Part shown: positions 21,055 to 47,006 of the stretch, in pieces
How the letters are laid out: each line of letters opens with the position of its first letter
Position numbering within the stretch: position 1 is the stretch's first letter
IMG/VR virus record: IMGVR_UViG_3300028840_008160
Location: 124,001-188,000 of that record
Reading direction: 5' to 3' (one strand)
Length of the DNA: 64,000 nt
Program-made: the position numbers and the translations under genes
The notes under the pieces: generated by a model
Databases searched by the model: none
Told to the model about the DNA's origin: nothing
Seen by the model: only the letters and a program-made list of their open reading frames with translations

Positions 21055-21138
21055 ATGACTTCACTGACTTGTAATAGCAATTACTTTACAAGTAGTTTTT
21101 CCAATTACGGAAAAACTGATCAGTGGGGTTTTGCATAG
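21055..21138 (+). CDS. Attenuator leader peptide 1 (MTSLTCNSNYFTSSFSNYGKTDQWGFA)
   Basis: SD GGAAGGA; rich in Asn, AGY-Ser, Phe, Cys codons matching downstream tRNAs. Confidence 0.75.
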   Translation: MTSLTCNSNYFTSSFSNYGKTDQWGFA

Positions 21139-21203
21139 GTTTCTAACTCAAAGCAAAACGAAATTCAAAGCTCCACTGATCTAACGGTCGGTGGGGCTTT
21201 TTT
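21118..21203 (+). terminator. Attenuator 1 antiterminator/terminator
   Basis: 21118-21133 pairs with 21166-21181, which otherwise forms terminator 21167-21203. Confidence 0.8.
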
Positions 21204-23923: not shown

Positions 23924-23948
23924 TTTTCTTTTGAAGGAGTTTATAAAT

Positions 23949-24034: not shown

Positions 24035-24066
24035 CTTTCTACGCAAATAGATATGATTACTATAAC

Positions 24067-29181: not shown

Positions 29182-29787
29182 ATGAGAGCAGATAAATTGA
29201 TCAGAAAATTAGGCGAACGGTATGGCGATCGTGTCGTAATCAATTCTGAATATCATATTCAAGTCGATTCTGACAAAGGACTTCATGATATTTGGTTAAA
29301 TCGTCATGGTGAAATAAAGTTCAAACCAGCCGGCAATCGCAATATTATAGAGCATACTTCTGTTGAAATTATTTTCAAAACGATAGATTCTATGAAGAAA
29401 ACGCATGTTGAATCTATGCAAGAAATGCTTGACGTTGCGCAATTTATTGGTCAATGTGAACAACAAGCAGATAAAATTGGTAATGGTATATTTGCTGATG
29501 CAGGTTTTAAAGATGGCAAAGCTAGAATAGCTGCTGTTATGATGTTAAACGGTGACATTGAAGCTAAAGCGACAACAGTAAAAGCTGACAATATCATTCA
29601 CGCAGAACAAATAGCAATCGAGCTTGCTTTAGATTTGCAAAGAGAACATTCTGATATACTTACTGTTTATAATGACAATCAAACTGCTTGTAAGAACATG
29701 CAAAATAAAGGATATGATTGCGTCAAATGGTTATCAAGAAAATTTACAAAAGCAGCTGACAAGATAGGCAATATGAGGTCAGCGTGA
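29182..29787 (+). CDS. RNase H-like domain protein
   Basis: ADAG, AE..AI, YND, AAD acidic residues in the C-terminal half. Confidence 0.6.
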   Translation: MRADKLIRKLGERYGDRVVINSEYHIQVDSDKGLHDIWLNRHGEIKFKPAGNRNIIEHTSVEIIFKTIDSMKKTHVESMQEMLDVAQFIGQCEQQADKIGNGIFADAGFKDGKARIAAVMMLNGDIEAKATTVKADNIIHAEQIAIELALDLQREHSDILTVYNDNQTACKNMQNKGYDCVKWLSRKFTKAADKIGNMRSA

Positions 29788-30443
29788 GCGGTGTATTTTT
29801 ACTCAATAGAAACATTGATGTTTCATATCTTGATGATCTTCTTTTAAAAAATGAGCAGTTACAAGTTGTTGATGATTCTGTCTATCAAAATATTCCACAA
29901 GAACATTTAGCATTATGGTGTCATAACAAAGGTATATATGGATTGCCGACAACAGAATTAGTTGACTGGTTAAAATCACATATAGTCAAAGACAAGACAA
30001 TAGAAATAGGCGCAGGAAATGGAGCTCTTGGTAGAACATTAGGAATTCCAATAACTGATTCTTGTATGATGAACGATCCACTAATTGCATCGCTATATGC
30101 TCTTCAAGGTCAGCCTATAACATCATATCCAGACGATATTATTGAAATGGATGCTGTTAGTGCCGTGAAACATTTTAAACCATCAGTTGTTATTGGCAAT
30201 TGGGTAACACATAAATACCGTGAAGATGAACATTGGCGCGGCGGAAATGTATTTGGCATTGATGAAGATTTTATTCTTGATAATGTTAATAAATATATTG
30301 TGATTGGCAATTCTACTGTTCATATGAACAAACGAATTTTGGATAGAGATCATACAAAAGTGTCATTTTCATGGGTACGTAGTCGATCAATGAATTCATA
30401 TGCTAACATTATTTATATTTGGGATAAAAATTGTGAGTATTGA
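29784..30443 (+). CDS. SAM-binding-fold hypothetical protein
   Basis: IEIGAGNG motif. Confidence 0.55.
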   Translation: MSGVFLLNRNIDVSYLDDLLLKNEQLQVVDDSVYQNIPQEHLALWCHNKGIYGLPTTELVDWLKSHIVKDKTIEIGAGNGALGRTLGIPITDSCMMNDPLIASLYALQGQPITSYPDDIIEMDAVSAVKHFKPSVVIGNWVTHKYREDEHWRGGNVFGIDEDFILDNVNKYIVIGNSTVHMNKRILDRDHTKVSFSWVRSRSMNSYANIIYIWDKNCEY

Positions 30444-30673
30444 ATGGGCATATGATGAGCGTACATGTACGCACGTTTTTGGTTGTAAACCAACTGATGG
30501 TGGTGGATGTTTTAAAGATGAAGTTGACGGTAAATGGTATGGTAATGTCGTTATTGAGGAACATAGCACTGTTTATGGTTTAGGACCGTATGATTCTATG
30601 CAACAGGCAAAAACAGATGTTGAATGTAAATATAACAATCTTAAACGGCATACTTTAATATAAGGAGGAAAAT

Positions 30674-31336
30674 ATGGACATAACAATAGATCTTGGTGAA
30701 TTCTCAAGATCAACAAGACGAGCTATTAGAAAAGCTTTGCAAAAACCACATTTATCGGACATGATAGATGATCAACAGGCTCAAACATTGTTAAAGTACT
30801 TAGCTATGACTATCAATGATGAATTGTCTGGCGATGTTATAGAAATGGGTTGCTGTTGGGGAGTTAGTGCTGTATATGAGCAAGCATTATTAAACGAAAT
30901 GGAATCAGATAAAAAATTGTATTTATATGATTCATTTGAAGGACTACCAGAAAAAATGCTGCAAGATGATAATGAAGTTGACATAAAATTTTATGAAGGA
31001 ATGATGAGAACAACTGTTGAAAAATTAAAAGACAATTTTAAAAAATGTGAGTTGCAAGAACCGAATGTGATAAAAGGCTGGTTTGATGAAATTCCAGAAA
31101 ATAAATTTCCAAAACAAGTATGTTTTGCATTTTTTGATTGTGATTTTTATACATCAATGAAAGATTGTTGGACAATTATTTATCCCAAATTAGTTAAGGG
31201 AGCTCGTGTTGTTGTACATGATTATAATTGGGAAGTTTTGCCCGGTGTAAAAATCGCATGCGATGAATTTCTTGCTGACAAGCCTGAAAAAATAGAAGAT
31301 TTAGGATGTCGGATGGGGCTTGTAATAAAAAAATAG
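30674..31336 (+). CDS. TylF/MycF/NovP-family O-methyltransferase
   Basis: YDSFEGLP, KGWF, DCDFY, HDY. Confidence 0.85.
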   Translation: MDITIDLGEFSRSTRRAIRKALQKPHLSDMIDDQQAQTLLKYLAMTINDELSGDVIEMGCCWGVSAVYEQALLNEMESDKKLYLYDSFEGLPEKMLQDDNEVDIKFYEGMMRTTVEKLKDNFKKCELQEPNVIKGWFDEIPENKFPKQVCFAFFDCDFYTSMKDCWTIIYPKLVKGARVVVHDYNWEVLPGVKIACDEFLADKPEKIEDLGCRMGLVIKK

Positions 31337-31340
31337 TTTT

Positions 31341-31437
31341 CTACGCATTTCAAAGTGATTATCTTTTTATCTATGGATTAAAACTGAATTAAAAAGAAAA
31401 AACCTTTCAATCTTCGTGTTTTTAAGGTATATTTATC
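31341..31437 (+). promoter_or_regulatory. Tandem promoter-like motifs heading tRNA operon 2
   Basis: ctacg-N9-gtgatta (31341-31361) and 29-bp near-copy of 20831-20859 at 31409-31437. Confidence 0.6.
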
Positions 31438-31460
31438 AGGAATTTAAACGGGATAGACTA

Positions 31461-31589
31461 ATGCAAACTCCAAGAATCCATACAGCTTCGCTTATAAAGC
31501 ATGTACATGCAGCTGTCATGGTCTTGTCCTCATTATCATGGCTACTCGAAGGAGAAGGTTATGATAAAACGAGGGCAGGTGGGGTTTGA
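31461..31589 (+). CDS. Attenuator leader peptide 2 (MQTPRIHTASLIKHVHAAVMVLSSLSWLLEGEGYDKTRAGGV)
   Basis: Contains cognate codons for 19 of 21 elongator anticodons in operon 2. Confidence 0.75.
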   Translation: MQTPRIHTASLIKHVHAAVMVLSSLSWLLEGEGYDKTRAGGV

Positions 31590-31654
31590 TGGAATAAACG
31601 AAACGATCTGAAAATCAAACCCCGCCGATCCAAAAGATCGACGGGGTTTTTTTT
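31578..31654 (+). terminator. Attenuator 2 antiterminator/terminator
   Basis: GGTGGGGTTTGAT (31578-31590) pairs with ATCAAACCCCGCC (31614-31626), the left arm of terminator 31617-31654. Confidence 0.8.
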
Positions 31655-31673
31655 GCTCTTGGGTGATAGTCAT

Positions 31674-31751
31674 GGTGATAGTAGCTCAGCTGGTTAGAGC
31701 ACTGGATTGTGGTTCCAGATGTCGGGGGTTCGAATCCCCTCTATCACCCCA
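31674..31751 (+). tRNA. tRNA-His(GTG)
   Basis: G-1:C73; ctgga-ttGTGgt-tccag. Confidence 0.93.
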
Positions 31752-31816
31752 AAGATTTTGATTGTGCTCTTTGACAGTCTCGGTAGTTGTTGCAAGCACA
31801 TTGTTGATGTAAACAA

Positions 31817-31900
31817 GCCGAAGTGGTGGAATTGGCAGACACGCTAGGTTCAGAGCTTAGTGAGAGCAATCTCATGCTGGTTCAAGTCCAGTCTTCGGCA
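31817..31900 (+). tRNA. tRNA-Leu(CAG)
   Basis: Type II cloverleaf. Confidence 0.9.
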
Positions 31901-31947
31901 TGACAATATACGATGTGGGAGTATTTTGGAAACTTCCACATCGTTCT

Positions 31948-32030
31948 GCGGTCGTGGTGGAATGGCAGACACGCTACTTTGAGGTGGTAGTGAGAGCAAT
32001 CTCGTGAAGGTTCAAGTCCTTTCGACCGCA
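31948..32030 (+). tRNA. tRNA-Leu(GAG)
   Basis: Type II cloverleaf. Confidence 0.9.
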
Positions 32031-32041
32031 TTAAATTTTGC

Positions 32042-32117
32042 GGAGACGTAGTTCAGTTGGTAGAACGCTGGATTGTCGATCCAGAGGCCGCGGGTTCAAA
32101 CCCCGTCGTTTCCGCCA
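32042..32117 (+). tRNA. tRNA-Asp(GTC)
   Basis: ctgga-ttGTCga-tccag; CCA. Confidence 0.9.
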
Positions 32118-32348
32118 AATTAAATTTGGTATGTAATGACAAGATGGGTTCGATTCCCATAACTTCTCTTCTAAAGAAGTGCTGGAAGCAATTTACTATG
32201 GATGTTATAGTAAAAATGAACGCGCGCAGGGTAATCGTAATTGATCCTATCATAGACGCGCATAAGAAACTGTTAGTCCAGTTTCATTGTAGAACTTAAT
32301 GATGGTACAAATGAAGTTACAGATGAAAATTATGATTATGGGATTTGC

Positions 32349-32423
32349 AGGCGTATAGCTCAATGGTAGAGCATTGGTCTCCAAAACCAACGGTTGCGGG
32401 TTCAAGTCCTGCTGCGCCTGCCA
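32349..32423 (+). tRNA. tRNA-Trp(CCA)
   Basis: ttggt-ctCCAaa-accaa; CCA end. Confidence 0.93.
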
Positions 32424-32581
32424 TTACTTGAAAGGTTCTAATGGTACAAATTGTAAGAGTTAAATGCAAAGAATGTAATCACAGATTTACACATGTTAAA
32501 GTAGATGAAGCAATGATTACATGTCCGATTTGTCAGTCAGATACGTTAATTGAACAAGTTTTTCATGAAATTAAAGTTTAA

Positions 32582-32657
32582 GCGGGCGTAGCTCAATTGA
32601 TAGAGTTCCACCCTTCCAAGGTGGCTGTTGTGGGTTTGAGTCCCATCGCCCGCTCCA
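32582..32657 (+). tRNA. tRNA-Gly(TCC)
   Basis: ccacc-ctTCCaa-ggtgg; CCA. Confidence 0.9.
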
Positions 32658-32661
32658 ATAT

Positions 32662-32748
32662 GGGTAGGCTGCGGAGACGGTGAGTCGCGGAAGACTGTAA
32701 ATCTTCTCCCTTCGGGGTGTGGGGGTTCGAATCCCTCCCTGCCCACCA
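32662..32748 (+). tRNA. tRNA-Tyr(GTA)
   Basis: gaaga-ctGTAaa-tcttc; long variable arm. Confidence 0.92.
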
Positions 32749-32754
32749 TTTTTT

Positions 32755-32828
32755 GGTCCGGTAGTGTAGTTGGTTAACACGGTACTCTCTCAAGGTACAG
32801 ATCACGAGTTCGATCCTCGTCCGGACTA
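32755..32828 (+). tRNA. tRNA-Glu(CTC)
   Basis: gtact-ctCTCaa-ggtac. Confidence 0.88.
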
Positions 32829-32880
32829 TTGCTTATGACAACAGATTTAATCGTCTGTTGACAGTTCGTTTTTCTAAAAC

Positions 32881-32954
32881 GGCCCGGTAGTGTAGCTGGT
32901 TAACACAACGCCCTTTCAAGGCGTAGATCGCGCGTTCAAGCCGCGTCCGGGCTA
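32881..32954 (+). tRNA. tRNA-Glu(TTC)
   Basis: acgcc-ctTTCaa-ggcgt. Confidence 0.9.
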
Positions 32955-33184
32955 TTTTAGGAGGATGAATGATATTTCTAAACTATCTAAATTGTGGAAT
33001 TGTTCGCATACACAAGTTAGACGATATTTACGAGATAATGATATGACATTTAACATGTTGAAGAAATGAATGCTGTATTCAACGTTATTTTGAATGCAGA
33101 GACGCGGAGTTCGATTCTCCCATGGGCTACCAACATTTAACAAAGGAGGAAAATATGACTTAACATCTTAACAGGAGTTAAGTT

Positions 33185-33439
33185 ATGTCAAGATCGTATC
33201 GAAAGCCCTGGTGCGTTGATGGTTACGGAACGAAAGGTAAGAAAATTAGCAAACGATTTGCTAATAAGACTGTTCGTAATGCTGATGATGTTCCAAATGG
33301 AAAAGCATATCGAAAATATTTTGAATCGTGGAACATTTCTGATTACAGATTTTTTATGGACAGTGAACCTTACTTTTCAAGAATTACTTTACAGTGGGAA
33401 GAACCACTGACACCTACGTGGAAGGCGCGTAGAAAGTGA
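33185..33439 (+). CDS. Small basic hypothetical protein
   Basis: SD AGGAG; MSRSYRKP...WKARRK. Confidence 0.65.
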   Translation: MSRSYRKPWCVDGYGTKGKKISKRFANKTVRNADDVPNGKAYRKYFESWNISDYRFFMDSEPYFSRITLQWEEPLTPTWKARRK

Positions 33440-33444
33440 AGTTT

Positions 33445-33518
33445 GCGGTAGTCGCATAGTGGCCAATTGCGCCACGTTGCCAACGTGGATGTCGGGAGTT
33501 CGAATCTCCCCTACCGCA
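33445..33518 (+). tRNA. tRNA-Gly(GCC)
   Basis: ccacg-ttGCCaa-cgtgg. Confidence 0.88.
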
Positions 33519-33535
33519 TTTATTTTGAAAATAAA

Positions 33536-33687
33536 AGGAAGTGGTGCTCTAGAATAAGACTTCAGAAAATCTTTTTACAGGTTCGAGTCCTGTTCTCCCC
33601 GCTATTATGGGGAGATAGCCAAATTGGTAAGGCAAAAGATCGCTAATCTTTGATAATTTTCATGGTTTTATTCACTTTCACCCTTTC
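33536..33687 (+). ncRNA. Y-RNA-like RNA 2 with circularly permuted tRNA-like domain (YrlA-like layout)
   Basis: Same closing stem as 20876; interior order T-arm, loop-closed acceptor stem (TCTCCCC/GGGGAGA), D-arm. Confidence 0.7.
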
Positions 33688-33694
33688 TTTTTAT

Positions 33695-33771
33695 GGGCGC
33701 ATAACTCAGCGGTACAGAGTACCTGCCTTACAAGCAGGAGGTCGTAGGTTCAAATCCTACTGTGCCCACCA
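33695..33771 (+). tRNA. tRNA-Val(TAC)
   Basis: cctgc-ctTACaa-gcagg; CCA. Confidence 0.93.
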
Positions 33772-33778
33772 TATTTAT

Positions 33779-33851
33779 CGCGGGGTGTAGCAGTTGGTAG
33801 CTTGTTGGGCTCATAACCCAACGGTCGTCGGTTCGAGTCCGACCCCCGCTA
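33779..33851 (+). tRNA. tRNA-fMet(CAT)
   Basis: CGCGGGG start, 1:72 mismatch, GGG/CCC in anticodon stem. Confidence 0.9.
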
Positions 33852-33921
33852 TTTACGCAGACTTAGATGGCCGGAGTCACTGCCCCTAGGGTATGTAAGG
33901 CCGCATCGACAGTCTGCAAAT

Positions 33922-33957
33922 GCCAGTGTGGCGGAATGGTAGACGCGCTAGTTCTAA
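33922..33957 (+). pseudogene. 5' half of a tRNA-Leu truncated next to endonuclease gene
   Basis: GCCAGTG-TG-GCGGAATGGTAGACGC-GCTAG then no 3' half. Confidence 0.65.
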
Positions 33958-33995
33958 TCTTTTGATATGAGAGTTTCTAATAAAAGGAAGTTCTC

Positions 33996-34748
33996 GTGTA
34001 CAAATGTGAAATATGTGGTAGAAAATTTGAAAAAGCTCAGCAAAAAGGTGGCCATGTTTATTATTGTCGTGCAAAACGTGATGGTATAGATTTACGGCCT
34101 GGCGACAGATTTGCTAAAGGTCGCGGCTGGGCGAAAGGTTTAACAAAAGATACTCATTCTGGTTTGATGAACATGTCAAGGCGGCATTCTGGACGGTTAA
34201 AGGGAAGGACTGATACACCTTATACAACTTGGCGAAAAGATAAAGAAAAAAGTAGAAAAGCAAACTTAAAATTATCAATTACACGAAAACGATTATTTGC
34301 TGACGGCAAATTAACAGTACCTGTTGCTAGCAAACGAGGACAATCGTCAATTTTTATTTATAATAGTAATAGGTATCATTTTCGTAGTAGATACGAGTTT
34401 GTTTTTGCGTTGTTTCTAGCGCACAAAAATATCATATTTAATTATGAAAATGTTCGTGTTGAATACAATAGTATAACAAGAATTTGTGATTTTGAAGTAA
34501 ATGGCAAACTTTACGAAATAAAAGGCTATCATTCTGATAAAGATATAATTGTGAAAAATACATTTACAACTTCAGGATTTGATGTTAAGTTTGTTTATAG
34601 ACCGTTTATCAAATTGGCTAGAAAGTATTTACATCGTCGCGGTTATGACATAAAACATTTGCTAGAACAAATTAAACAATATAGAGATCAAAATCGTATT
34701 TTTGAATTTGAATTTTGCCACAGTGGAGAAATTGGTATACTCGCATGA
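33996..34748 (+). CDS. Putative homing endonuclease (Zn finger + PD-(D/E)XK)
   Basis: CEIC, FRSRYE, CDF...YEIKG; ends inside tRNA-Leu(TAG). Confidence 0.7.
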   Translation: MYKCEICGRKFEKAQQKGGHVYYCRAKRDGIDLRPGDRFAKGRGWAKGLTKDTHSGLMNMSRRHSGRLKGRTDTPYTTWRKDKEKSRKANLKLSITRKRLFADGKLTVPVASKRGQSSIFIYNSNRYHFRSRYEFVFALFLAHKNIIFNYENVRVEYNSITRICDFEVNGKLYEIKGYHSDKDIIVKNTFTTSGFDVKFVYRPFIKLARKYLHRRGYDIKHLLEQIKQYRDQNRIFEFEFCHSGEIGILA

Positions 34749-34799
34749 TTTAGGGTCATGTGCATTTTATGCATAAGGGTTCGAGTCCCTTCTGTGGCA
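34717..34799 (+). tRNA. tRNA-Leu(TAG)
   Basis: catga-ttTAGgg-tcatg; type II. Confidence 0.85.
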
Positions 34800-34885
34800 T
34801 TTAAGGAGGAATGAAATGAGAGTTAAGCTATGTCCTACACAAGTTTTTGATGGCCGAATATGCATGACAAATCAATGTTATGTAT

Positions 34886-34958
34886 AGGGGCATAGCTCAG
34901 GGGTTAGAGCGACGGCCTTAAGCCGTGTCTGTCGTGGGTTCAATTCCCACTGCCCTCA
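34886..34958 (+). tRNA. tRNA-like RNA with 5-nt anticodon loop (CTTAA)
   Basis: Normal D and T arms; acggc-cttaa-gccgt. Confidence 0.6.
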
Positions 34959-35008
34959 TTGTGAAAACTATGAAATCAATAGCATACAATTCTCTAAAAG
35001 GAGATTGT

Positions 35009-35332
35009 ATGAATGAAAAAGACGATGATCTTCGACCAGCGACTAATGATGAAATGATACAACATGCTAAAGAGCTTATTGATAGCTGCGAAACTGAAGA
35101 TGATTATAAAAAAATGGAAAACTTTATGGGTTGTGCAATTATCATTGCAGCTGCAAATCTAGAAGTAAGAGAAGGCGTTGAACAACTTCTTGAGAATAAA
35201 GCTAAAGAATTTGGTTTGAAATATAAACGAATGAGTAGATTTTTTCTTAAACAAAGTGACAAGAAAATCTTAGCTTTAGCAAAAAAGATTGTTAGAATGG
35301 TTTACAAAAAAGTATTGGCAGAAAACATATAA
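35009..35332 (+). CDS. Hypothetical protein
   Basis: SD AGGAG before ATG 35009. Confidence 0.55.
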   Translation: MNEKDDDLRPATNDEMIQHAKELIDSCETEDDYKKMENFMGCAIIIAAANLEVREGVEQLLENKAKEFGLKYKRMSRFFLKQSDKKILALAKKIVRMVYKKVLAENI

Positions 35333-35415
35333 GCCCAGGTGGTGGAATGGCAGACACTGAAGACTTAAAATCTTCTGGGATTTATCCCGTACCGGTTCGA
35401 ATCCGGTCCTGGGCA
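35333..35415 (+). tRNA. tRNA-Leu(TAA)
   Basis: gaaga-ctTAAaa-tcttc; type II. Confidence 0.92.
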
Positions 35416-35423
35416 TTTAGATT

Positions 35424-35942
35424 ATGTCTAAGATTGTGATTAATAGACATGAGCTTAAAAAAGCTGTTGTGCAGTCTAGAACATACAAAGATGTTTTTCG
35501 GCATCTTTGTATTACTGGAACAGGACATCATTATCGTATAGTTAAACGATTAGTAAAGCAGAGTGGTTTGAGCATTGATCATTTTGTTGGTCGAGGATGG
35601 AATAAAGGACTGAAGCTTAAAGGGATTAGACAAAAACCATTAAATGAAATTTTAATTGAAAATTCAACATATACAAATACGAATAGACTTCGTAAGAGAC
35701 TTATTGATGAAGGTATTTTCGAACAAAAATGTAACAATTGTAAACGAACAAAGTGGTGTAATAAGCAAATACCTTTAGAATTAGAACATAAGAATGGAAT
35801 TAAGCATGATTTTAGAATAGAGAATTTAGAACTTTTATGTCCTAATTGTCATGCTCAAACACGATTTTATCGCGGGCGAAATATGAAAAGTGCGAGAAAG
35901 AAAAATGAAGCACATCTGGTTGTTTTTCTATCATGTGTTTAG
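35424..35942 (+). CDS. HNH endonuclease
   Basis: CNNC...LELEHKNG...N.ELLCPNCH. Confidence 0.85.
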   Translation: MSKIVINRHELKKAVVQSRTYKDVFRHLCITGTGHHYRIVKRLVKQSGLSIDHFVGRGWNKGLKLKGIRQKPLNEILIENSTYTNTNRLRKRLIDEGIFEQKCNNCKRTKWCNKQIPLELEHKNGIKHDFRIENLELLCPNCHAQTRFYRGRNMKSARKKNEAHLVVFLSCV

Positions 35943-36010
35943 TGTTGTAGAAGTTATATTACTAATGCCTGCAATTTTTGTTGAGCTGGCATTTACTAGA
36001 AGATTTTTAT

Positions 36011-36084
36011 CGCGGGGTAGAGCAGTCTGGTAGCTCGTTAGGCTCATAACCTAAAGGTCGGCGGTTCAAATCCGCTCCCCGCTA
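36011..36084 (+). tRNA. tRNA-fMet(CAT)
   Basis: CGCGGGG start, 1:72 mismatch, ctCATaa loop. Confidence 0.88.
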
Positions 36085-36088
36085 TTTT

Positions 36089-36164
36089 GCCTCCTTAGCT
36101 CAGTTGGTAGAGCAACTGACTCTTAATCAGTAGGTCGTAGGTTCGATCCCTACAGGGGGTACCA
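36089..36164 (+). tRNA. tRNA-Lys(CTT)
   Basis: actga-ctCTTaa-tcagt; CCA. Confidence 0.93.
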
Positions 36165-36165
36165 A

Positions 36166-36339
36166 TTTACTTGACATTCAGCGAGCCTATTACGCTGGAG
36201 TCTTTAAGGTTTGCATGAGGATAACCGTAATTGGCCTCAATTGAAATGCATAAGCCTGACTGCGAGAGAGTAGGCGGGATCGGTAAAAGTCCGGGGAAGT
36301 ATCTGTGGAAGGTTGCCCTTAAATTCAATGTCAAGTAGG
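36166..36339 (+). ncRNA. Unclassified structured RNA
   Basis: Ends pair (TACTTGACATT/AATGTCAAGTA); GC-richer interior; fills the gap between two tRNAs. Confidence 0.5.
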
Positions 36340-36340
36340 T

Positions 36341-36413
36341 GCGATAGTAACTCAGTTAGTAGAGTATCTGCTTCCCAAGCAGAATGTCGCGGGTTCGAGT
36401 CCCGCCTATCGCT
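36341..36413 (+). tRNA. tRNA-Gly(CCC)
   Basis: tctgc-ttCCCaa-gcaga. Confidence 0.88.
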
Positions 36414-36429
36414 TATTTTGAAAGGAGAG

Positions 36430-36669
36430 ATGATGGGATATGCGATTTTAGGGAAACACAGTATCACTTGTTTTAGAGGCGGAACACCTTTAGCAAATAT
36501 GAAAATGAAGGTGAAAGACAGAAAAAATAACGAGTGGTATTGTAAATGTTCAGAAGAAGAATTCAATCGCTATCCTGATTCTCGATCTGTTGAAGTATAT
36601 GATAATAAAGGACGTTTAGCAAAGAAGTTTCTTAAAGGATTTTTGACAATTGTTGAAATGCGCTCATAG
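36430..36669 (+). CDS. Hypothetical protein
   Basis: SD AAGGAG before ATG 36430. Confidence 0.5.
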   Translation: MMGYAILGKHSITCFRGGTPLANMKMKVKDRKNNEWYCKCSEEEFNRYPDSRSVEVYDNKGRLAKKFLKGFLTIVEMRS

Positions 36670-36732
36670 CTCAATTGGTAGAGCAATGCCCTTTTAAGGC
36701 ATGGGTTTCAGGTTCAAGTCCTGATGGGCGTA
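36660..36732 (+). tRNA. tRNA-Lys(TTT)
   Basis: atgcc-ctTTTaa-ggcat. Confidence 0.9.
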
Positions 36733-36845
36733 TTTAGACTTAAATGATCTCATTTGATATAATTTGGAGGTGCAGAATGTTTAACAAACGGTACAAACGA
36801 AAACGAAAGACATTCTGCCCGTAGTCGTGATGGCTACGGGCTTAT

Positions 36846-36927
36846 GGGCTCGTGGCCAAGTGGTAGCCGAAAGGCGAAGGCAACGGACTTAATCCGTGGA
36901 TCGGGGGTTCGAATCCCTCCGGGCCCA
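36846..36927 (+). tRNA. tRNA-like RNA with 5-nt anticodon loop (CTTAA) and D-loop hairpin insert
   Basis: acgga-cttaa-tccgt; GCC-GAAA-GGC inserted in D loop. Confidence 0.6.
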
Positions 36928-36948
36928 TTAACTTTGGAAAGATTCATA

Positions 36949-37395
36949 ATGGATAAACCGATATTAGGCTTTTTTGGTGAGTACAGGTTCCTTTCAAATT
37001 TTCATTTATGCGAGATTGTTTACAAAGGAATAACATTTCCTAGTACTGAACACGCGTTTCAAGCTGATAAGGCTACAAATGAAGAATTAAGACAATATAT
37101 TGCTGATCTACCTACATGTAGAGCAGCGAAAAAGGCAGGCGGAACAATTGACCTTCGTGCTCATTGGGAAACTGATAAGATTCAAGTAATGATCGACATT
37201 ACTAGAATAAAATATCAGATACCAGAACTTAAAGAAAAATTACTTGCTACTGGGCAAGCATATTTAGAAGAAACAAACACATGGAATGATAAATTTTGGG
37301 GTGTTTGTAATGGTGTTGGACAAAATCAACTCGGTAAGACATTAATGCAAGTGCGATATGAATTAAGATGGATTGGTCAAGACAAATATACTTGA
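36949..37395 (+). CDS. NADAR-family (YbiA-like) protein
   Basis: FLSNF, STEHAFQA.K, LLATG, D.FWG, G.NQLGK.LM.VR. Confidence 0.9.
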   Translation: MDKPILGFFGEYRFLSNFHLCEIVYKGITFPSTEHAFQADKATNEELRQYIADLPTCRAAKKAGGTIDLRAHWETDKIQVMIDITRIKYQIPELKEKLLATGQAYLEETNTWNDKFWGVCNGVGQNQLGKTLMQVRYELRWIGQDKYT

Positions 37396-37582
37396 AAAAA
37401 TGCGTATATGAATCAGAAAGTTTGGAATGTACAAGCTCGCAGAGGTGGTCCATATTGCGAACATTTTAGATGTCCAAGAATCAAGAGAAAGACGGGCAAA
37501 TGTGACGGAAAATGCAGTAAACATGGAACAACAAGCGCTAGAATTGGAATAAAACGAGCTAGACAACATATGAAACAGATAA

Positions 37583-37668
37583 GCCGGGATGGTGGAACGG
37601 CAGACACAACGGACTCAAAATCCGTCGAAGGCAACTTCATGAGGGTTCAAGTCCCTCTCCCGGCACCA
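37583..37668 (+). tRNA. tRNA-Leu(CAA)
   Basis: acgga-ctCAAaa-tccgt; type II; CCA. Confidence 0.93.
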
Positions 37669-37676
37669 TTTTAATT

Positions 37677-38090
37677 ATGAATCTTACGTCAACACCAGTA
37701 AGACGAAAAAATTATTTTGTTGAAGCATTACAGCAAAGCGCTTTACCAGAGCCATTTGCTTTACCAGAGCCATTTGTTACATACAACGACATTCATAATT
37801 TTTTTCGCAAACGAGGATTTAATAATGTACGAATTGAACCTGGTGATTTTGGTAGGATTGATATTTATATAAAAGAGTATTGGTTTAATTTAAATAAGTT
37901 GTTAAAACAAGTTGATGAAGTAAAACTTGTTGGCATATTAGTTTCGTTGCACAGACCAACATTTTGGCAATGGTTAATGACAATAAAAATTGTTAGAGTT
38001 TGTCGATATAAGTTGATAAAAATTGGTCGTCGATATAGAAAAAGATCAAGACCAATTGTTTCAAAATTCGATGTAATAACGGAGGATTAG
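37677..38090 (+). CDS. Hypothetical protein
   Basis: ORF track; tandem ALPEPF duplication. Confidence 0.5.
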   Translation: MNLTSTPVRRKNYFVEALQQSALPEPFALPEPFVTYNDIHNFFRKRGFNNVRIEPGDFGRIDIYIKEYWFNLNKLLKQVDEVKLVGILVSLHRPTFWQWLMTIKIVRVCRYKLIKIGRRYRKRSRPIVSKFDVITED

Positions 38091-38166
38091 GATAACGGTA
38101 ATCAAAAAACAACATATAAAATGGAAGATAGGAAAAAGTAGCGTTAGACGATTTTTAAAAGTTTAT

Positions 38167-38258
38167 GGAGGAGTGCCGGAGTCTGGTTTATCGGAGCAGT
38201 CTTGAAAACTGTCGGTCGTTCACACGGCCCGTAGGTTCAAATCCTACCTCCTCCGCCA
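38167..38258 (+). tRNA. tRNA-Ser(TGA)
   Basis: gcagt-ctTGAaa-actgt; long variable arm; CCA. Confidence 0.93.
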
Positions 38259-38279
38259 TATCTTTGCTAGTAAGAAGTC

Positions 38280-38651
38280 TTGTATGATTTAAAAGGAGAT
38301 GATAGATTGAGAGTTTTAGTGTTAGATGATTCAAAGATTAGATTAATTCAATTCAGACAGAATTTGATTGGTCACAATGTCAGGTGTGTTACAACTGTTA
38401 GAGAGACGATTGATTCTTTGGCAGATGAAGACTGGGATTATTTGTTTTTGGATCATGATCTTGGTGGTCAAGTTAATGTACCATCGGGTCCAGGTACAGG
38501 ATATGAAGTCGCTCAATGGCTAGTTGAACATCCTGATAGACAACCTGAACACATTGTTCTTCATAGTTTTAATGAAAATGGACGAAAGAACATGCAATCA
38601 TTGCTTCCTGAAGCTATGATGTGTCCTGGTGCATGGACAAAAATAAGGTAG
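38280..38651 (+). CDS. Cyclic-phosphate-processing receiver-domain protein
   Basis: VLDD, LFLDHDLG, GYEVA.WL, VLHS.N..G. Confidence 0.75.
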   Translation: MYDLKGDDRLRVLVLDDSKIRLIQFRQNLIGHNVRCVTTVRETIDSLADEDWDYLFLDHDLGGQVNVPSGPGTGYEVAQWLVEHPDRQPEHIVLHSFNENGRKNMQSLLPEAMMCPGAWTKIR

Positions 38652-38732
38652 GTTAGGATAATTGGTAATCCAGCAGTTTCGAAAACTGCCGACCGCAAGG
38701 TCTTGGGGGTTCAAATCCCTCACCTACCGCCA
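38647..38732 (+). tRNA. tRNA-Ser(CGA)
   Basis: gcagt-ttCGAaa-actgc; CCA. Confidence 0.92.
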
Positions 38733-38737
38733 AAATT

Positions 38738-39028
38738 ATGGACGAGCCAGAGTTTAAACAGTTTAAAGAACAGCTTGATCACTTAGATCAAGAAATAATG
38801 ATGGGTACTGTTAAATCTGTTTTGTTTGTTGACGGCCCAAAAGCAGGAGAAACATTGTTGATGAATTGGAAAGATGGTAAGCCTTGTCATCTGAAAATGT
38901 TTATGATTGTGCCCAGAATGTTTAAATTATCTGAGCCAGTAAAAAAAGCTGAATATGAATGGAATATTGATGACGAAGTGTTTGAATTTACAGGACGAAC
39001 AAAAGTTGATTTTGCAAGGGATTTATGA
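38738..39028 (+). CDS. Hypothetical protein
   Basis: ORF track. Confidence 0.5.
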   Translation: MDEPEFKQFKEQLDHLDQEIMMGTVKSVLFVDGPKAGETLLMNWKDGKPCHLKMFMIVPRMFKLSEPVKKAEYEWNIDDEVFEFTGRTKVDFARDL

Positions 39029-39248
39029 ATGGAAGGTATAGAACAATTAACAACTGCATTTGCTGAAATTGAAAAACACGAACTCAAAGTGAATACTATT
39101 ATTTGTACAGCTTGTGGTTGTGTTTTATCTGTTAATGATGATAATAAACCATGTGAACATCTTAGAGAATTAGGGAAAGCGTTTGAATTAAAAGATTGAA
39201 TTATTAAAACAAGGAAAAACAATTGTCTCAAAAGAGCCAGGTAATTCA

Positions 39249-39473
39249 ATGACACCATTGTTGAAGTCGAGGCAACCTGTAAGAATTGCTCCAGTTACAA
39301 TAGATGAAGTTGATGTTGGTGACATCGTATATTGTAAGGTGAGAGGAAATTGTTATACGCATTTGGTGAAAGCAAAAAGTTCTAGAGGTTGTCTAATTGG
39401 CAATAATCATGGACGAATTAATGGTTGGACGAAACAAGTTTACGGCAAAGTCATTGAAATTTTGGAGGGTTAA
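39249..39473 (+). CDS. Small peptidase S24/S26-fold-like protein
   Basis: GNSMTP just at the start, VGDIVYCKV, HLVK; true start may lie upstream. Confidence 0.45.
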   Translation: MTPLLKSRQPVRIAPVTIDEVDVGDIVYCKVRGNCYTHLVKAKSSRGCLIGNNHGRINGWTKQVYGKVIEILEG

Positions 39474-39553
39474 ACCCGTAACTGGTAGCGGTGTAGATTG
39501 GAAATCTACGGCTTGTAAAAGTCCTGAGGGTTCAAGTCCCTCACCCTCCGCCA
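39464..39553 (+). tRNA. tRNA-Ser(GGA)
   Basis: gtaga-ttGGAaa-tctac; CCA. Confidence 0.9.
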
Positions 39554-39582
39554 TCTTTGTATTTCAGTATGATTAGATAGAC

Positions 39583-40008
39583 ATGAATCAAATACTTTGC
39601 GAAACACCGATGCATTTTATAGCAAAAGCATTGTCAAATGTTATATTTCTTGAAGCTAGATGGTTGCCTGATAACAATGATAAAGGATTGAATGTTAAGG
39701 ACATTATAGATTTACCTTATCATGTAATAGAATCAGTGCCTGTGATAATAACTCCATCATTAGAAATAGTGATAACTAAACCAATAGAATTGAAATTTGA
39801 AAACAAGACAATGTTCTACTGTGTTTTTTATCATCAAAGTTCAAAGTCAGTTTGTATTCCTAATTGGTTTCCAATGGTTATGTGGGGAGAGCCAACAACA
39901 TCATACACAATTTCTAGCAAAAATATTCCAAGTAATAGTATTGCTGGTATCCAGATGTCAGATATACCGTCTTTTAATAAGTTTGACATATTAGTAGGCG
40001 AGAATTGA
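39583..40008 (+). CDS. Hypothetical protein
   Basis: ORF track; promoter-like motif ends 7 nt upstream. Confidence 0.55.
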   Translation: MNQILCETPMHFIAKALSNVIFLEARWLPDNNDKGLNVKDIIDLPYHVIESVPVIITPSLEIVITKPIELKFENKTMFYCVFYHQSSKSVCIPNWFPMVMWGEPTTSYTISSKNIPSNSIAGIQMSDIPSFNKFDILVGEN

Positions 40009-40059
40009 TATAGATTTGATAATGAGATTCACAATAAATTTAACATACAGAAGGGCTTT

Positions 40060-40881
40060 ATGGACACACAAGTAATTGAAAAGAAATTCGAGTCGATGGG
40101 AGCTCGAGTGAAATTTTCGGAACCTGCAGTTCGCGATGGCAATCTGTCGATTGATATTCGTCGTGATAAGGAAGGTGAATACTTCGATTTGAGAGTCAAA
40201 AAAGAGATTGAGATGTTAGTACTTGATGTTCAAAAAGCTGATCGACATCTTCTTCTCATGGCACGTGATCCGGATAATCCGAAAGCAAAGTTTCTTTGCG
40301 GGCATGATGAACGTCACTGGTTCACATGCGCAATTCCTGAAGGCAAGGTTACTTCGGTTATTCAAGCAAAACAGGCATTGAAGCCGAAGGAACTACAGAA
40401 TCTTGAAGCACGTGAAGGATTGAAAACAAAAAGAGCTCATAAACGTCATCGCCGGTTGAATTCTGGAATAAAAGTTCACCGTCAAGGTGAGTTCATGTTT
40501 ATTCCGCACAAAGATTTTCAGCCGTCAAAAGGATTTTCAACAGTTGTTTTGAAGAATGAGCCAATGCAAAGAGGCGGTGGAAATGCGCATATGGCTCAGT
40601 TCCTTTACAGGCGTGGTGGAACAACTGTTTGGGTGTCAGCTTATTCGCCTGAAGCAAGAAATGGATTGACACAAAGGCAGTATGATTCAATAAGAAAGAG
40701 AGATCCAGAATCGGGACGTTACAATTGGCGGACAATGGTTCGTGATCCTGAAGTATTTGTAAAAGGTCATATCACACATGTCGAACACAAAACATTGGAT
40801 CTCGGTGATGTGTGGCACAAAGTAGTATTAAATACAGAAAATCAGGCTCGTGCTGCTAGAAATGTAGCATTTCTTGACTAA
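40060..40881 (+). CDS. Hypothetical basic protein
   Basis: 273 aa; FLCGHDERHWF, RQGEFMF.P, EH..L motifs. Confidence 0.7.
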   Translation: MDTQVIEKKFESMGARVKFSEPAVRDGNLSIDIRRDKEGEYFDLRVKKEIEMLVLDVQKADRHLLLMARDPDNPKAKFLCGHDERHWFTCAIPEGKVTSVIQAKQALKPKELQNLEAREGLKTKRAHKRHRRLNSGIKVHRQGEFMFIPHKDFQPSKGFSTVVLKNEPMQRGGGNAHMAQFLYRRGGTTVWVSAYSPEARNGLTQRQYDSIRKRDPESGRYNWRTMVRDPEVFVKGHITHVEHKTLDLGDVWHKVVLNTENQARAARNVAFLD

Positions 40882-40883
40882 TT

Positions 40884-40957
<74 letters not shown>

Positions 40958-41052: not shown

Positions 41053-41169
41053 ATGAAAAACTTAACGCAGACATATCATTTTATATCAAGGCCTGATGCG
41101 CAGGTCAGTGATATGGACATGCGTCAAGTCACCTGTGCCGCAACAACAATTAGAAACGGAGCGACATAG
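41053..41169 (+). CDS. Attenuator leader peptide 3 (MKNLTQTYHFISRPDAQVSDMDMRQVTCAATTIRNGAT)
   Basis: SD GAGGA; has cognate codons for all 12 tRNA species in operon 3. Confidence 0.78.
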   Translation: MKNLTQTYHFISRPDAQVSDMDMRQVTCAATTIRNGAT

Positions 41170-41234
41170 GTAGGGTTTGGAATCAAAATTATTGAATTTC
41201 AAGCCCTGCCGAGGAAACTCGACGGGGCTTTTTT
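41169..41234 (+). terminator. Attenuator 3 antiterminator/terminator
   Basis: GGTAGGGTTTGGA (41169-41181) pairs with TTCAAGCCCTGCC (41198-41210), left arm of terminator 41201-41234. Confidence 0.8.
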
Positions 41235-46882: not shown

Positions 46883-46945
46883 ATGGTATACGCAAATAAC
46901 ATTCGCCGACCCCAGCCGCAACAACCACGGAGATTGTATGCATAG
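46883..46945 (+). CDS. Attenuator leader peptide 4 (MVYANNIRRPQPQQPRRLYA)
   Basis: SD AAGGA; run CGC CGA CCC CAG CCG CAA CAA CCA CGG matches all downstream anticodons. Confidence 0.82.
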   Translation: MVYANNIRRPQPQQPRRLYA

Positions 46946-47006
46946 GTGAGGTTGTCGAATTTAATGACTCGAAAAAGAGCCTCACCAAAAATGAGGCTCT
47001 TTTTTT
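46945..47006 (+). terminator. Attenuator 4 antiterminator/terminator
   Basis: GGTGAGGTT (46945-46953) pairs with AGCCTCACC (46978-46986); terminator 46972-47006. Confidence 0.82.

What the first reader, a model, noticed from the sequence alone, without database searches (positions are those of the whole stretch)
31461..31654. Attenuator 2: 16 consecutive leader codons all read by tRNAs of the largest block
TTG TCC TCA TTA TCA TGG CTA CTC GAA GGA GAA GGT TAT GAT AAA ACG are all cognate to tRNAs at 31674-40957, with CAT x3, AAG, GTA, TCG and GGG elsewhere in the leader; only CTG and GAG are missing. The leader has no Phe, Asn, Cys, AGY or CGN codons. Its terminator shares the GCCGA...TCGACGGGG pattern, including a C.A mismatch, with attenuator 3, suggesting common ancestry.
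Basis: partly seen in the sequence, partly recalled or inferred. Interest (0 to 1): 0.82.

Follow-up and report, generated by a model that had tools for sequence, protein, structure and literature searches.

The report
Leader-peptide attenuator gating phage tRNA genes
A huge uncultivated phage places a tiny translated "test" gene and a switchable transcription stop signal in front of each of its tRNA gene blocks, and the test gene is written in the codons read by the tRNAs behind it. This probably lets the phage make tRNAs only when they run short, an arrangement I could not find described anywhere.

Summary
ATG 31461 to TGA 31589 is a 42-codon ORF. Codons 22-37 (31524-31571) are all cognate to tRNAs of the block at 31675-40957. 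This is the longest such run among 442 short ORFs in the window.

The ORF is followed by an intrinsic terminator (31620-31646 plus T8). A stronger antiterminator helix (31578-31590 with 31614-31626) has a 5' arm that contains the leader's stop codon. This is the anatomy of a ribosome-mediated transcription attenuator.

Three sister units (21055-21203, 41053-41234, 46883-47006) precede the other tRNA blocks. Each leader matches its own block.

Relatives from metagenomes carry homologous units. In them both helices covary and the leader codons broadly follow the local tRNA set.

The same design also occurs in unrelated, cultured phiCbK-like Caulobacter phages.

Most likely mechanism: a ribosome that reaches the stop codon masks the antiterminator, so transcription terminates. 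A ribosome stalled on a hungry codon leaves the antiterminator free, so the tRNA genes are transcribed. The result would be demand-driven feedback on tRNA supply.

There are no expression data, so the regulation itself is inferred. I found no matching Rfam family and no paper describing this. I class it as a new variant of classical attenuation, of high interest.

The parts
31341..31361 (+). Motif A (CTACG-N10-rTGAyTA), a candidate phage promoter or regulator site
   Evidence: It occurs only 5 times in the window: 20787, 24039 (before RtcB), 31341, 41012 and 46700. It is conserved 20-100 nt upstream of homologous leaders in L011, L012/L132, L013 and L133. Its function is inferred.
31405..31433 (+). 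Sigma-70-like promoter (TTTCAA, 17 nt, TATATT), 'motif B'
   Evidence: Read directly from the sequence. A near-identical copy lies at 20835-20859. Related TTGATT-N17-TATATT promoters precede both leaders of L054. The transcription start is not mapped.
31450..31453 (+). Shine-Dalgarno-like GGGA, 7 nt before the ATG
   Evidence: Sequence. It is weaker than the GGAAGGA, GAGGA and AAGGA of the sister leaders.
31461..31589 (+). Leader ORF 2: 42 codons plus TGA
   Evidence: Homologous ORFs: L011 2650-2775, L132 810-941, L133 395-535 (51-61% aa identity).
31524..31571 (+). Run of 16 codons cognate to block-2 tRNAs (the sensor codons)
   Evidence: P about 4e-4, rank 1 of 442 short ORFs.
31525..31577 (+). 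Hairpin H1 inside the leader. It coincides with the sensor run and may be an RNA polymerase pause hairpin
   Evidence: Present in the MFE fold. Conserved in all four type-2 leaders, but mostly by invariant sequence. The pause role is inference only.
31578..31590 (+). Antiterminator 5' arm (GGTGGGGTTTGAT); contains the stop codon TGA 31587-31589
   Evidence: 13-bp helix in the MFE fold. Duplex -28 kcal/mol, z -5.2 against shuffles. Covariation in alignment A2.
31614..31626 (+). Antiterminator 3' arm; overlaps the terminator 5' arm at 31620-31626
31620..31654 (+). Intrinsic terminator: stem 31620-31630 / 31636-31646 with the C31625.A31641 mismatch, loop CAAAA, T8 at 31647-31654
   Evidence: -15.4 kcal/mol; covariation. 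The mismatched C pairs with G in the antiterminator.
31675..40957 (+). Block 2, the proposed regulated unit: 24 tRNA genes interspersed with small protein genes (HNH endonuclease, NADAR, a conserved 273-aa protein)
   Evidence: No other strong + strand terminator lies between 31654 and 41203.
21055..21203 (+). Sister attenuator 1: leader MTSLTCNSNYFTSSFSNYGKTDQWGFA, antiterminator, terminator; precedes the Phe, Phe, Asn, Ser-gct, Cys, Asn tRNAs
   Evidence: It has a full 1:2 / 2:3 / 3:4 design. 10 of 26 codons are cognate against a 13.6% background.
41053..41234 (+). Sister attenuator 3; precedes the Met, Thr, Ile, Ala, Asp, Arg, Val tRNAs
   Evidence: 11 of 11 anticodons covered.
46883..47006 (+). 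Sister attenuator 4: leader MVYANNIRRPQPQQPRRLYA; precedes the Pro, Gln, Arg tRNAs
   Evidence: Nine consecutive cognate codons against a 9.7% background (analytic P about 9e-9). Sensor codons pair with the antiterminator 5' arm.

Best explanation
The element is a ribosome-mediated transcription attenuator that gates a 9.3-kb tRNA gene block of a roughly 330-kb uncultivated phage.

Proposed sequence of events:
1. Transcription starts at a promoter about 25-120 nt upstream and produces a short leader mRNA that is translated.
2. The last part of the leader is written almost entirely in codons read by the tRNAs encoded behind the terminator.
3. If those charged tRNAs are plentiful, the ribosome keeps up with RNA polymerase and reaches the TGA. 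It then covers 31578-31590, so this segment cannot pair with 31614-31626. The terminator hairpin 31620-31646 forms and transcription stops 20 nt before tRNA-His.
4. If any of the sensed tRNAs is scarce, the ribosome stalls inside 31524-31562. The antiterminator forms first, being both more stable and transcribed earlier. The terminator is pre-empted and the tRNA block is transcribed.

The net effect is negative feedback, with tRNA genes switched on by demand for exactly the tRNAs they encode. Four such units in series give each block its own sensor.

Shown here: the anatomy, the codon-to-tRNA match, its conservation, and helix covariation.

Inferred: that the ORF is translated, the sign of the response, the pause role of hairpin H1, and which polymerase is involved.

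Unit 2 differs from units 1 and 4. It has no anti-antiterminator (1:2 pairing), so an untranslated transcript should read through.
For: Anatomy: the MFE fold of 31440-31665 contains the antiterminator, not the terminator (z -4.5). Masking a ribosome footprint at the stop codon switches the fold to the terminator. Masking one in the sensor run keeps the antiterminator.

The same layout holds in all 16 units examined:
- antiterminator duplex -18 to -32 kcal/mol, against -12 to -22 for the terminators;
- z -2.6 to -7.5;
- 5' arm spanning or abutting the stop codon;
- 8-13 nt overlap with the terminator 5' arm;
- stop-to-stem spacer of 25-36 nt.

Covariation over 9 type-2 and type-3 units:
- antiterminator 93.5% paired, with 6 pairs showing compensatory change;
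- terminator 93.3% paired, with 5 such pairs;
- 0 of 500 shuffles reach the observed score, and slid controls are 29-54% paired;
- the shared columns covary with both partners.

Codon match:
- Each of the four window leaders fits its own block best; the true assignment is the best of 24.
- Over 14 leaders, Fisher combined P is about 1e-30 (leaders share ancestry, so this overstates independence). 0 of 20000 block permutations reach the observed score. The other reading frames are not enriched, except for W2 +1.
- Where relatives partition tRNAs differently, the leaders follow. L054 leader A has 21 of 30 codons for a block of Phe, Asp, Met, Ile, Ser-gct (P 2e-9). L018 leader 4 lacks CGN codons and its block lacks CGN-reading Arg tRNAs. 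L011 leader 3 ends GCA ACA ATT AGA ATG before exactly Ala, Thr, Ile, Arg and Met tRNAs.

Other support:
- The only strong + strand terminators between 20 and 52 kb are the four attenuators plus two operon ends.
- Only about 20 nt separate the terminator from tRNA-His, which leaves no room for a separate promoter.
- An independent lineage shows the same design. phiCbK-like Caulobacter and Brevundimonas phages have two conserved leader-plus-terminator units before tRNA clusters, with leader runs such as RQFVRQIQFVRVNR before Val, Ile, Val, Gln, Asn, Arg, Phe tRNAs. The runs vary with cluster content.
Against: - There are no transcript, ribosome-profiling or termination data. No RNA run was listed for this phage.
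- For leader 2 alone, the cognate count is not significant (P 0.098) and the +1 frame scores as high. Block 2 reads 52% of all codons used, so specificity is lower than for units 1 and 4.
- Its SD (GGGA) is weak.
- It lacks a 1:2 pairing, so the classical 'no translation means termination' safeguard is absent.
- The sensor run coincides with hairpin H1, so part of its sequence conservation may be structural.
- Fine-scale tracking is imperfect. The L011 and L012 leaders keep TCC and TTA codons without Ser-gga or Leu-taa genes in the fetched block. Phage Rogue kept Ser codons after losing its Ser tRNAs.
- The host, the transcribing polymerase and its response to intrinsic terminators are unknown.
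- A leader cannot distinguish tRNA abundance from charging.
Confidence: 0.8

Rival explanations
1. It is a leader-peptide attenuator, but it reads general translational capacity or amino-acid starvation (how tightly ribosomes follow the polymerase) rather than the supply of the specific tRNAs encoded downstream. On this view the codon match would be a by-product of the phage's codon preferences.
For: Any attenuator of this geometry responds to any slowing of the ribosome. Leader 2 uses 14 amino acids, and block 2 reads 52% of codons. 40 of 41 leader-2 codons are cognate to some downstream phage tRNA in blocks 2-4.
Against: The null models already use the phage's own codon usage. Each leader matches its own block, not the others. 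Leaders with small blocks are extreme: 9.7% background against 9 consecutive codons, and 19% background against 21 of 30. Leader content shifts with block content between phages.
Confidence: 0.12
2. It is an ordinary operon-end terminator after a small, real or spurious, ORF. The tRNA block would be made by constitutive leak-through or from its own promoter, and the codon run would be chance.
For: The terminator is canonical. The total cognate count of leader 2 is not significant by itself, and the +1 frame scores equally.
Against: The upstream methyltransferase gene ends at 31336, and two promoter-like motifs lie between it and the leader. There are only about 20 nt between the T-run and tRNA-His. 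The antiterminator is conserved, with covariation, and always sits on the stop codon. The same construction appears four times in the window and in two unrelated phage lineages.
Confidence: 0.04
3. The small ORF encodes a functional micro-protein (leader 2 has a hydrophobic stretch, AAVMVLSSLSWLL). The terminator would simply end its transcript, and the conservation would be protein-level.
For: 51-61% amino-acid identity among four homologues. One homologue and the phiCbK-type leaders are annotated as hypothetical proteins.
Against: At identical amino acids, codon identity is higher in the leaders (0.59-0.90) than in a neighbouring conserved protein of the same genome pairs (0.45-0.52). That points to nucleotide-level constraint. 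The sister leaders (RRPQPQQPRR; CNSNYFTSSFSN) have no protein-like character. This reading also does not explain the stop codon embedded in an antiterminator.
Confidence: 0.04

Closest known systems
Leader-peptide attenuators of amino-acid biosynthesis operons (trp, his, leu, thr, ilv, pheA of enterobacteria)
   Same: A short translated ORF carrying regulatory codons. An intrinsic terminator. An antiterminator that shares a strand with the terminator and is masked by a ribosome at the leader's stop codon. Units 1 and 4 of the window also have the 1:2 anti-antiterminator, with the regulatory codons in segment 1.
   Different: The regulated genes are tRNA genes, not enzymes. The regulatory codons are not repeats of one amino acid but a mixed list (up to 20 anticodons) that mirrors the tRNA genes downstream. 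The element is viral and occurs as four units in series. Unit 2 lacks the 1:2 pairing. No Rfam leader family matches.
pheST (phenylalanyl-tRNA synthetase) leader attenuator of E. coli (from general knowledge)
   Same: Attenuation by cognate codons applied to a component of the translation machinery, giving feedback on the supply of charged tRNA.
   Different: It regulates a synthetase, senses one amino acid, and is cellular. Here the tRNA genes themselves are the output.
T-box riboswitches
   Same: A terminator/antiterminator decision taken according to tRNA status, upstream of translation-related genes.
   Different: A T-box binds uncharged tRNA directly through a specifier codon and the T-box sequence, without translation. 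No T-box match was found even at E up to 10. Here a translated ORF with its stop codon in the switch is the sensor.
Leader-plus-terminator units before the tRNA clusters of phiCbK-like phages (Karma gp083, CcrSC gp144, and unannotated ORFs)
   Same: The same principle in an unrelated, cultured lineage: a leader rich in the amino acids of the following tRNA cluster, then an annotated rho-independent terminator with an alternative pairing.
   Different: No sequence homology to the window's units. High-GC hosts. The match is clearer at the amino-acid level than at the exact-codon level. These are annotated only as hypothetical proteins or terminators, and the phiCbK genome paper does not discuss them (PMC3556154).

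Membership tests
Ribosome-mediated (leader-peptide) transcription attenuator | Short ORF with start codon and ribosome-binding site in the 5' leader of the regulated unit | tested here: met
   ATG 31461, GGGA 7 nt upstream, 42 codons. The ORF is conserved in L011, L132 and L133. Translation itself was not measured.
Ribosome-mediated (leader-peptide) transcription attenuator | Intrinsic terminator between the leader and the regulated genes | tested here: met
   Stem 31620-31646, T8 31647-31654, 20 nt before tRNA-His. Supported by covariation.
Ribosome-mediated (leader-peptide) transcription attenuator | Antiterminator mutually exclusive with the terminator, positioned so that a ribosome at the stop codon masks it | tested here: met
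   31578-31590 pairs with 31614-31626, and the stop codon lies inside the 5' arm. Compensatory changes are seen in 6 pairs.
Ribosome-mediated (leader-peptide) transcription attenuator | Leader enriched in codons whose decoding reports the regulated pathway | tested here: met
   Run of 16 (P 4e-4), 20 of 22 anticodons covered (P 1e-4), rank 1 of 442 ORFs. The family-wide match has combined P about 1e-30.
Ribosome-mediated (leader-peptide) transcription attenuator | Anti-antiterminator (segment 1:2 pairing) that enforces termination without translation | tested here: not met
   Free leader-2 RNA folds into the antiterminator. Hairpin H1 does not sequester the core 13-nt antiterminator arm. The feature is met in sister units 1 and 4. 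Not all known attenuators have it.
Ribosome-mediated (leader-peptide) transcription attenuator | Readthrough shown to depend on leader translation and on supply of charged tRNA | not testable with these tools
   No RNA runs were listed. Needs a bench assay.
T-box riboswitch (Rfam RF00230) | Match to the T-box covariance model (specifier loop, T-box sequence) | tested here: not met
   No T-box hit at gathering score in 19000-52000, nor at E up to 10 in 31330-31675.
Curated Rfam amino-acid operon leaders (Trp, His, Leu, Thr, Phe leaders) | Match to any of these covariance models | tested here: not met
   Only tRNA hits at gathering score. All 13 weak hits in 31330-31675 are far below their thresholds and none is a leader family.

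The most novel reading that the evidence does not exclude
Phages with large tRNA sets run a bank of codon-barcoded sensors. Each tRNA block would be kept silent while host tRNAs suffice. It would be induced selectively when the particular tRNAs it encodes are depleted, for instance by host anticodon nucleases or by phage-induced decay of host tRNA. On this reading the attenuators are a damage-sensing counter-defence circuit, and they evolved at least twice (in the window's clade and in phiCbK-like phages). Motif A, shared with the RtcB tRNA-repair ligase gene, would tie them into one tRNA-maintenance regulon.
Probability: 0.3. Interest if true: 0.95.

Novelty: new variant of a known kind. Interest (0 to 1): 0.88.

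Why it matters
Why phages carry tens of tRNA genes, and how they deploy them, is an open question. Codon-usage compensation, independence from a decaying host, and escape from tRNA-cleaving defences have all been proposed.

A leader whose codons list the tRNAs behind it would show that expression of these genes is coupled to demand for exactly those tRNAs. It would also turn the question into a testable one: deplete one tRNA and watch one block switch on.

It extends classical attenuation in three ways. The output is the sensed molecule itself. The sensor is combinatorial, reading up to 20 anticodons in one leader. And the element is viral.

The recurrence of the design in cultured Caulobacter phages provides an immediate experimental system. 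The leaders also give a sequence-only way to predict the transcription units of tRNA arrays in metagenomic phage genomes.

Tried and rejected
- Nucleotide search of 29000-33000 against cultured phages found only tRNA-to-tRNA hits.
- The neighbouring methyltransferase as a synteny anchor found only the source contig.
- The 251-aa protein at 45935-46687 has homologues, but their loci carry no tRNAs, so it was useless as an anchor.
- The conserved 273-aa protein (40060-40878) worked.
- Exact-pattern scans gave the known relatives plus two chance hits, L130 and L131, which were discarded.
- More distant relatives of the marker protein (50% identity or less, including loci with 17-30 tRNAs) gave no significant leader in my scan within +/-10 kb. 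The units may be absent there, or missed.
- Four other tRNA-rich cultured phages (Atuin, phiRSL1, VCPH, Carin-5) show no such leader, so the design is not universal.
- No RNA sequencing run was listed. Read laying was not used because only DNA contigs were on offer.
- Rfam gave nothing.
- The marker protein has no match among cultured phages or in the PDB.
- Equilibrium folding of whole leaders gives the terminator in many units. I rejected this as evidence against the antiterminator, because truncated (co-transcriptional) folds form the antiterminator in every unit inspected.
- Seven literature searches found no description of leader-peptide attenuators before tRNA genes.

Full report
**What the window is.** The 64-kb window comes from a 329.8-kb viral contig, IMGVR_UViG_3300028840_008160, found in sediment and seawater metagenomes. 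It has 35% G+C and nearly all genes are on the + strand. ARAGORN finds 56 tRNA genes, all on the + strand, and Rfam confirms them. They fall into four blocks:
- B1, 21231-24035: Phe, Phe, Asn, Ser-gct, Cys, Asn.
- B2, 31675-40957: 24 genes.
- B3, 41268-45125: Met, Thr, Ile, Ala, Asp, Arg, Val.
- B4, 47025-51048: Pro, Gln, Arg.

**The observation.** The finding's coordinates are exact.
- ATG 31461 opens a 42-codon ORF ending at TGA 31587-31589.
- Codons 22-37 (31524-31571) are all cognate to B2 tRNAs.
- CAT x3, AAG, GTA, TCG, GGG, CTT and ATG add further B2 anticodons, so 20 of 22 sense anticodons are represented. Leu-cag and Glu-ctc are missing.
- The leader has no B1 codons (Phe, Asn, Cys, AGY) and no CGN.

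Against the window's own codon usage (B2 codons are 52% of usage):
- A run of at least 16 has P about 4e-4.
- The anticodon coverage has P about 1e-4, with a null mean of 12.5.
- Among 442 ATG-ORFs of 20-70 codons on both strands, this ORF has the longest B2 run (16; the next is 13).
- The plain count (26/41) is not significant, and the +1 frame scores 27/40. Taken alone, leader 2 is suggestive rather than compelling.

**Anatomy.**
- A canonical terminator follows: stem 31620-31630 / 31636-31646 with a C31625.A31641 mismatch, then T8. It ends 20 nt before tRNA-His.
In the minimum-energy fold of 31440-31665, 31578-31590 (which contains the TGA) pairs over 13 bp with 31614-31626 (which contains the first 7 nt of the terminator stem). 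The whole fold has z -4.5.
- Masking a ribosome footprint on the stop codon flips the predicted fold to the terminator. Masking a footprint in the sensor run keeps the antiterminator.
- Upstream lie an SD-like GGGA (31450-31453), a sigma-70-like promoter (TTTCAA 31405-10, 17 nt, TATATT 31428-33), and motif A (CTACG-N10-rTGAyTA, 31341-31361).
- Motif A occurs only five times in the window: before each leader and before the intein-containing RtcB gene.

**Sister units in the window.** Three more units have the same construction.
- Leader 1 (21055-21138): 10 of 26 codons are Cys, Asn, AGY or Phe, against a 13.6% background.
- Leader 3 (41053-41169): covers 11 of 11 B3 anticodons.
- Leader 4 (46883-46945): nine consecutive codons, CGC CGA CCC CAG CCG CAA CAA CCA CGG, against a 9.7% background (analytic P about 9e-9). 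This is again the longest such run among the 442 ORFs.
- Of the 24 ways to assign leaders to blocks, the true one is the most surprising under the null.
- Units 1 and 4 also have a segment-1:2 pairing in which the sensor codons pair with the antiterminator 5' arm. That is the full classical four-segment design. Unit 2 lacks it. Its sensor run instead forms hairpin H1 (31525-31577), directly upstream of the antiterminator.
- Between 20 and 52 kb, the only strong + strand terminators are these four plus two operon ends, at about 27541 and about 51076.

**Relatives.** A conserved 273-aa protein inside B2 (40060-40878; more than 900 homologues, many on contigs of 100-470 kb) served as an anchor.
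- Syntenic relatives (52-64% identity) carry homologous units: L011 (types 2, 3, 4), L012/L132 (2, 3), L013 (3), L018 (4), L048 (3), L014 (3), L054 (two units with a different partition of tRNAs), plus L052 and L056.
- A profile search with the leader peptides found a fourth type-2 leader, in L133.
- In all 16 units, an antiterminator duplex of -18 to -32 kcal/mol has its 5' arm on or next to the stop codon. The range is -30 to +18 nt relative to the stop codon's last base. It overlaps 8-13 nt of the terminator 5' arm.
- The terminators themselves are -12 to -22 kcal/mol, and the stop-to-stem spacer is 25-36 nt.
- In an alignment of nine type-2 and type-3 units, both helices are about 93% paired, with 6 and 5 pairs showing compensatory change. 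No shuffle out of 500 reaches the observed covariation, and slid controls drop to 29-54% paired.
- The shared strand covaries with both partners, which is the signature of a two-state switch.
- The C.A mismatch in the terminator is conserved (G.A in L133). Its C pairs with G in the antiterminator, which biases the competition towards the antiterminator.

**Leader codons follow tRNA content.**
- L011's third block has only Met, Thr-tgt, Ile, Ala-tgc and Arg-tct, and its leader ends GCA ACA ATT AGA ATG.
- The window's larger B3 adds Thr-ggt, Ala-ggc, Ala-cgc and Val-gac, and its leader adds ACC, GCC, GCG and GTC.
- L018's fourth block lacks Arg tRNAs that read CGN codons, and its leader lacks CGN.
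- L054 groups Phe, Asp, Met, Ile and Ser-gct in one block, and 21 of 30 leader codons are theirs (P 2e-9). Its other leader covers 15 of 15 anticodons of a block with Cys, His, Leu, Tyr, Trp, Thr, Ala and Ser tRNAs.
- Over 14 leaders, the combined binomial P is about 1e-30. The leaders share ancestry, so this overstates independence.
- No permutation of blocks among leaders (0 of 20000) reaches the observed excess. Apart from W2 +1, the off-frames show at most modest cognate fractions.
- Tracking is not perfect. The L011 and L012 leaders keep TCC and TTA without the matching genes in the fetched block.
- At identical amino acids, codon identity is higher in type-2 leaders (0.59-0.90) than in the marker protein (0.45-0.52). 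This fits nucleotide-level constraint, though the numbers are small.

**An independent, cultured lineage.** While checking cultured tRNA-rich phages, I found the same principle in Caulobacter phage CcrSC and its phiCbK-like relatives. The region is conserved in 51 records.
- Leader A is the annotated hypothetical protein CcrSC gp144 / Karma gp083. In Karma, 38 of 44 residues are drawn from A, K, L, P, S, T. It stands before Pro, Pro, Thr, Lys, Lys, Leu x3, Ala, Ser, Ser tRNAs.
- Leader B is an unannotated ORF whose core run varies with the cluster behind it:

| Phage | Leader B core run | tRNA cluster |
|---|---|---|
| CcrSC | RQFVRQIQFVRVNR | Val, Ile, Val, Gln, Asn, Arg, Phe |
| Karma | RQFVRQIQVVRNIR | Phe, Val, Ile, Ile, Val, Gln, Gln, Arg |
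| Colossus | RNNVRQIRVRQFN | Val, Ile, Ile, Val, Gln, Gln, Asn, Arg, Arg |
| Domovoi | RNNVQQIQVVRFNR | Val, Ile, Val, Gln, Asn |

- Each leader B is followed by a rho-independent terminator that GenBank annotates in Karma and Colossus. A leader segment can pair with its 5' arm.
- Rogue lost its Ser tRNAs but keeps the Ser codons.
- The phiCbK genome paper mentions neither leaders nor attenuation (PMC3556154).
- Four other cultured phages (Atuin, phiRSL1, VCPH, Carin-5) have no such unit.

**Mechanism.**
- *Shown:* the ORF, the terminator, an antiterminator with the stop codon inside it, conservation and covariation, and block-specific codon content.
- *Inferred from the established logic of trp/his-type attenuation:* a ribosome that reaches the stop codon covers the antiterminator 5' arm while the polymerase is transcribing the terminator, so transcription ends. 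A ribosome stalled on a hungry sensor codon (A site up to about 31562) leaves the arm free, so the antiterminator forms first and the tRNA block is transcribed.
- This gives negative feedback on the supply of the charged tRNAs that the block encodes.
- For unit 2, an untranslated transcript should read through. H1 may act as a pause hairpin that holds the polymerase until a ribosome arrives. This last point is speculation.
- The attenuators stand in series, each behind its own promoter-like motif.

**Comparison and novelty.**
- The switch works like a classical leader-peptide attenuator and meets the sequence-testable defining features, except the 1:2 pairing in unit 2.
- It is not a T-box, and it matches no Rfam leader family.
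- It differs from every described attenuator I know of or could find in regulating tRNA genes, in using a mixed codon list that mirrors those genes, and in being viral.
- I class it as a new variant of a known kind.

**Limits.**
- There are no expression data.
- The host and the transcribing polymerase are unknown.
- The single-leader statistics for unit 2 are moderate.
- The library searched does not include most subscription-journal papers.

Noticed in passing
L134 18416-18535 and 25841-26005 (Caulobacter phage CcrSC, MH588547.2); L139, L140, L141, L142: Cultured phiCbK-like phages have two conserved leader-plus-terminator units before their tRNA clusters. The leader composition mirrors the cluster, for example RQFVRQIQFVRVNR before Val, Ile, Val, Gln, Asn, Arg, Phe tRNAs. 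One leader is annotated as a hypothetical protein (gp144 / gp083) and the other is unannotated.
   Followed up: partly
window 20906-20980: A well-scoring tRNA (Rfam 64 bits) that ARAGORN reads with anticodon ATT. It sits between the promoter-like motifs and leader 1, so outside attenuator control. Its identity is unclear; it might be a mis-read anticodon loop or an Ile-type tRNA.
   Followed up: no
window 27440-27511 and 34885-34959: Two suppressor-type tRNAs, with anticodon CTA (reads TAG) and TTA (reads TAA). Leaders 1, 3 and 4 end in TAG and leader 2 in TGA. If the amber suppressor is active, ribosomes would read through those three leaders into the terminator region, which could change attenuation.
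   Followed up: no
window 50894-50967; L012 18215-18364: tRNAs with an 8-nt anticodon loop (four-base 'anticodons' CTTG and CTTT) are conserved between the window and a relative. They may be frameshift-type or otherwise unusual decoders.
   Followed up: no
window 24039-26496: An RtcB tRNA/RNA ligase gene interrupted by an intein (Pfam RtcB plus Intein_splicing). It is preceded by the same motif A as the four leaders, which suggests co-regulation of tRNA repair and tRNA supply.
   Followed up: partly
window 40060-40881: A 273-aa protein with no Pfam or PDB match but more than 900 homologues, many on huge-phage contigs. It usually lies inside or next to tRNA arrays. Invariant motifs are CGHDERxW and RQGEF(M/F)F. 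It may be a tRNA-related enzyme.
   Followed up: partly
window 22879-23598, 35424-35942, 41454-42023, 47948-48361: HNH and DUF559 endonuclease genes are scattered between the tRNA genes. They are probably homing endonucleases that shuffle the arrays. NADAR (36844-37395), AdoMet decarboxylase (22444-22836) and radical SAM (48294-49325) genes also lie inside the blocks and would be co-regulated with them.
   Followed up: partly
window 36863-36920: A partial tRNA match (Rfam 37.9 bits, model positions 7-64) overlaps the start of the NADAR ORF. It may be a tRNA remnant.
   Followed up: no
L011 2864-3010; L132 1027 onward: In the relatives, a small SD-preceded ORF (MEKLEVSKCF... / MDKFEVSKCF...) lies between the type-2 terminator and the first tRNA. 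It is absent from the window.
   Followed up: no
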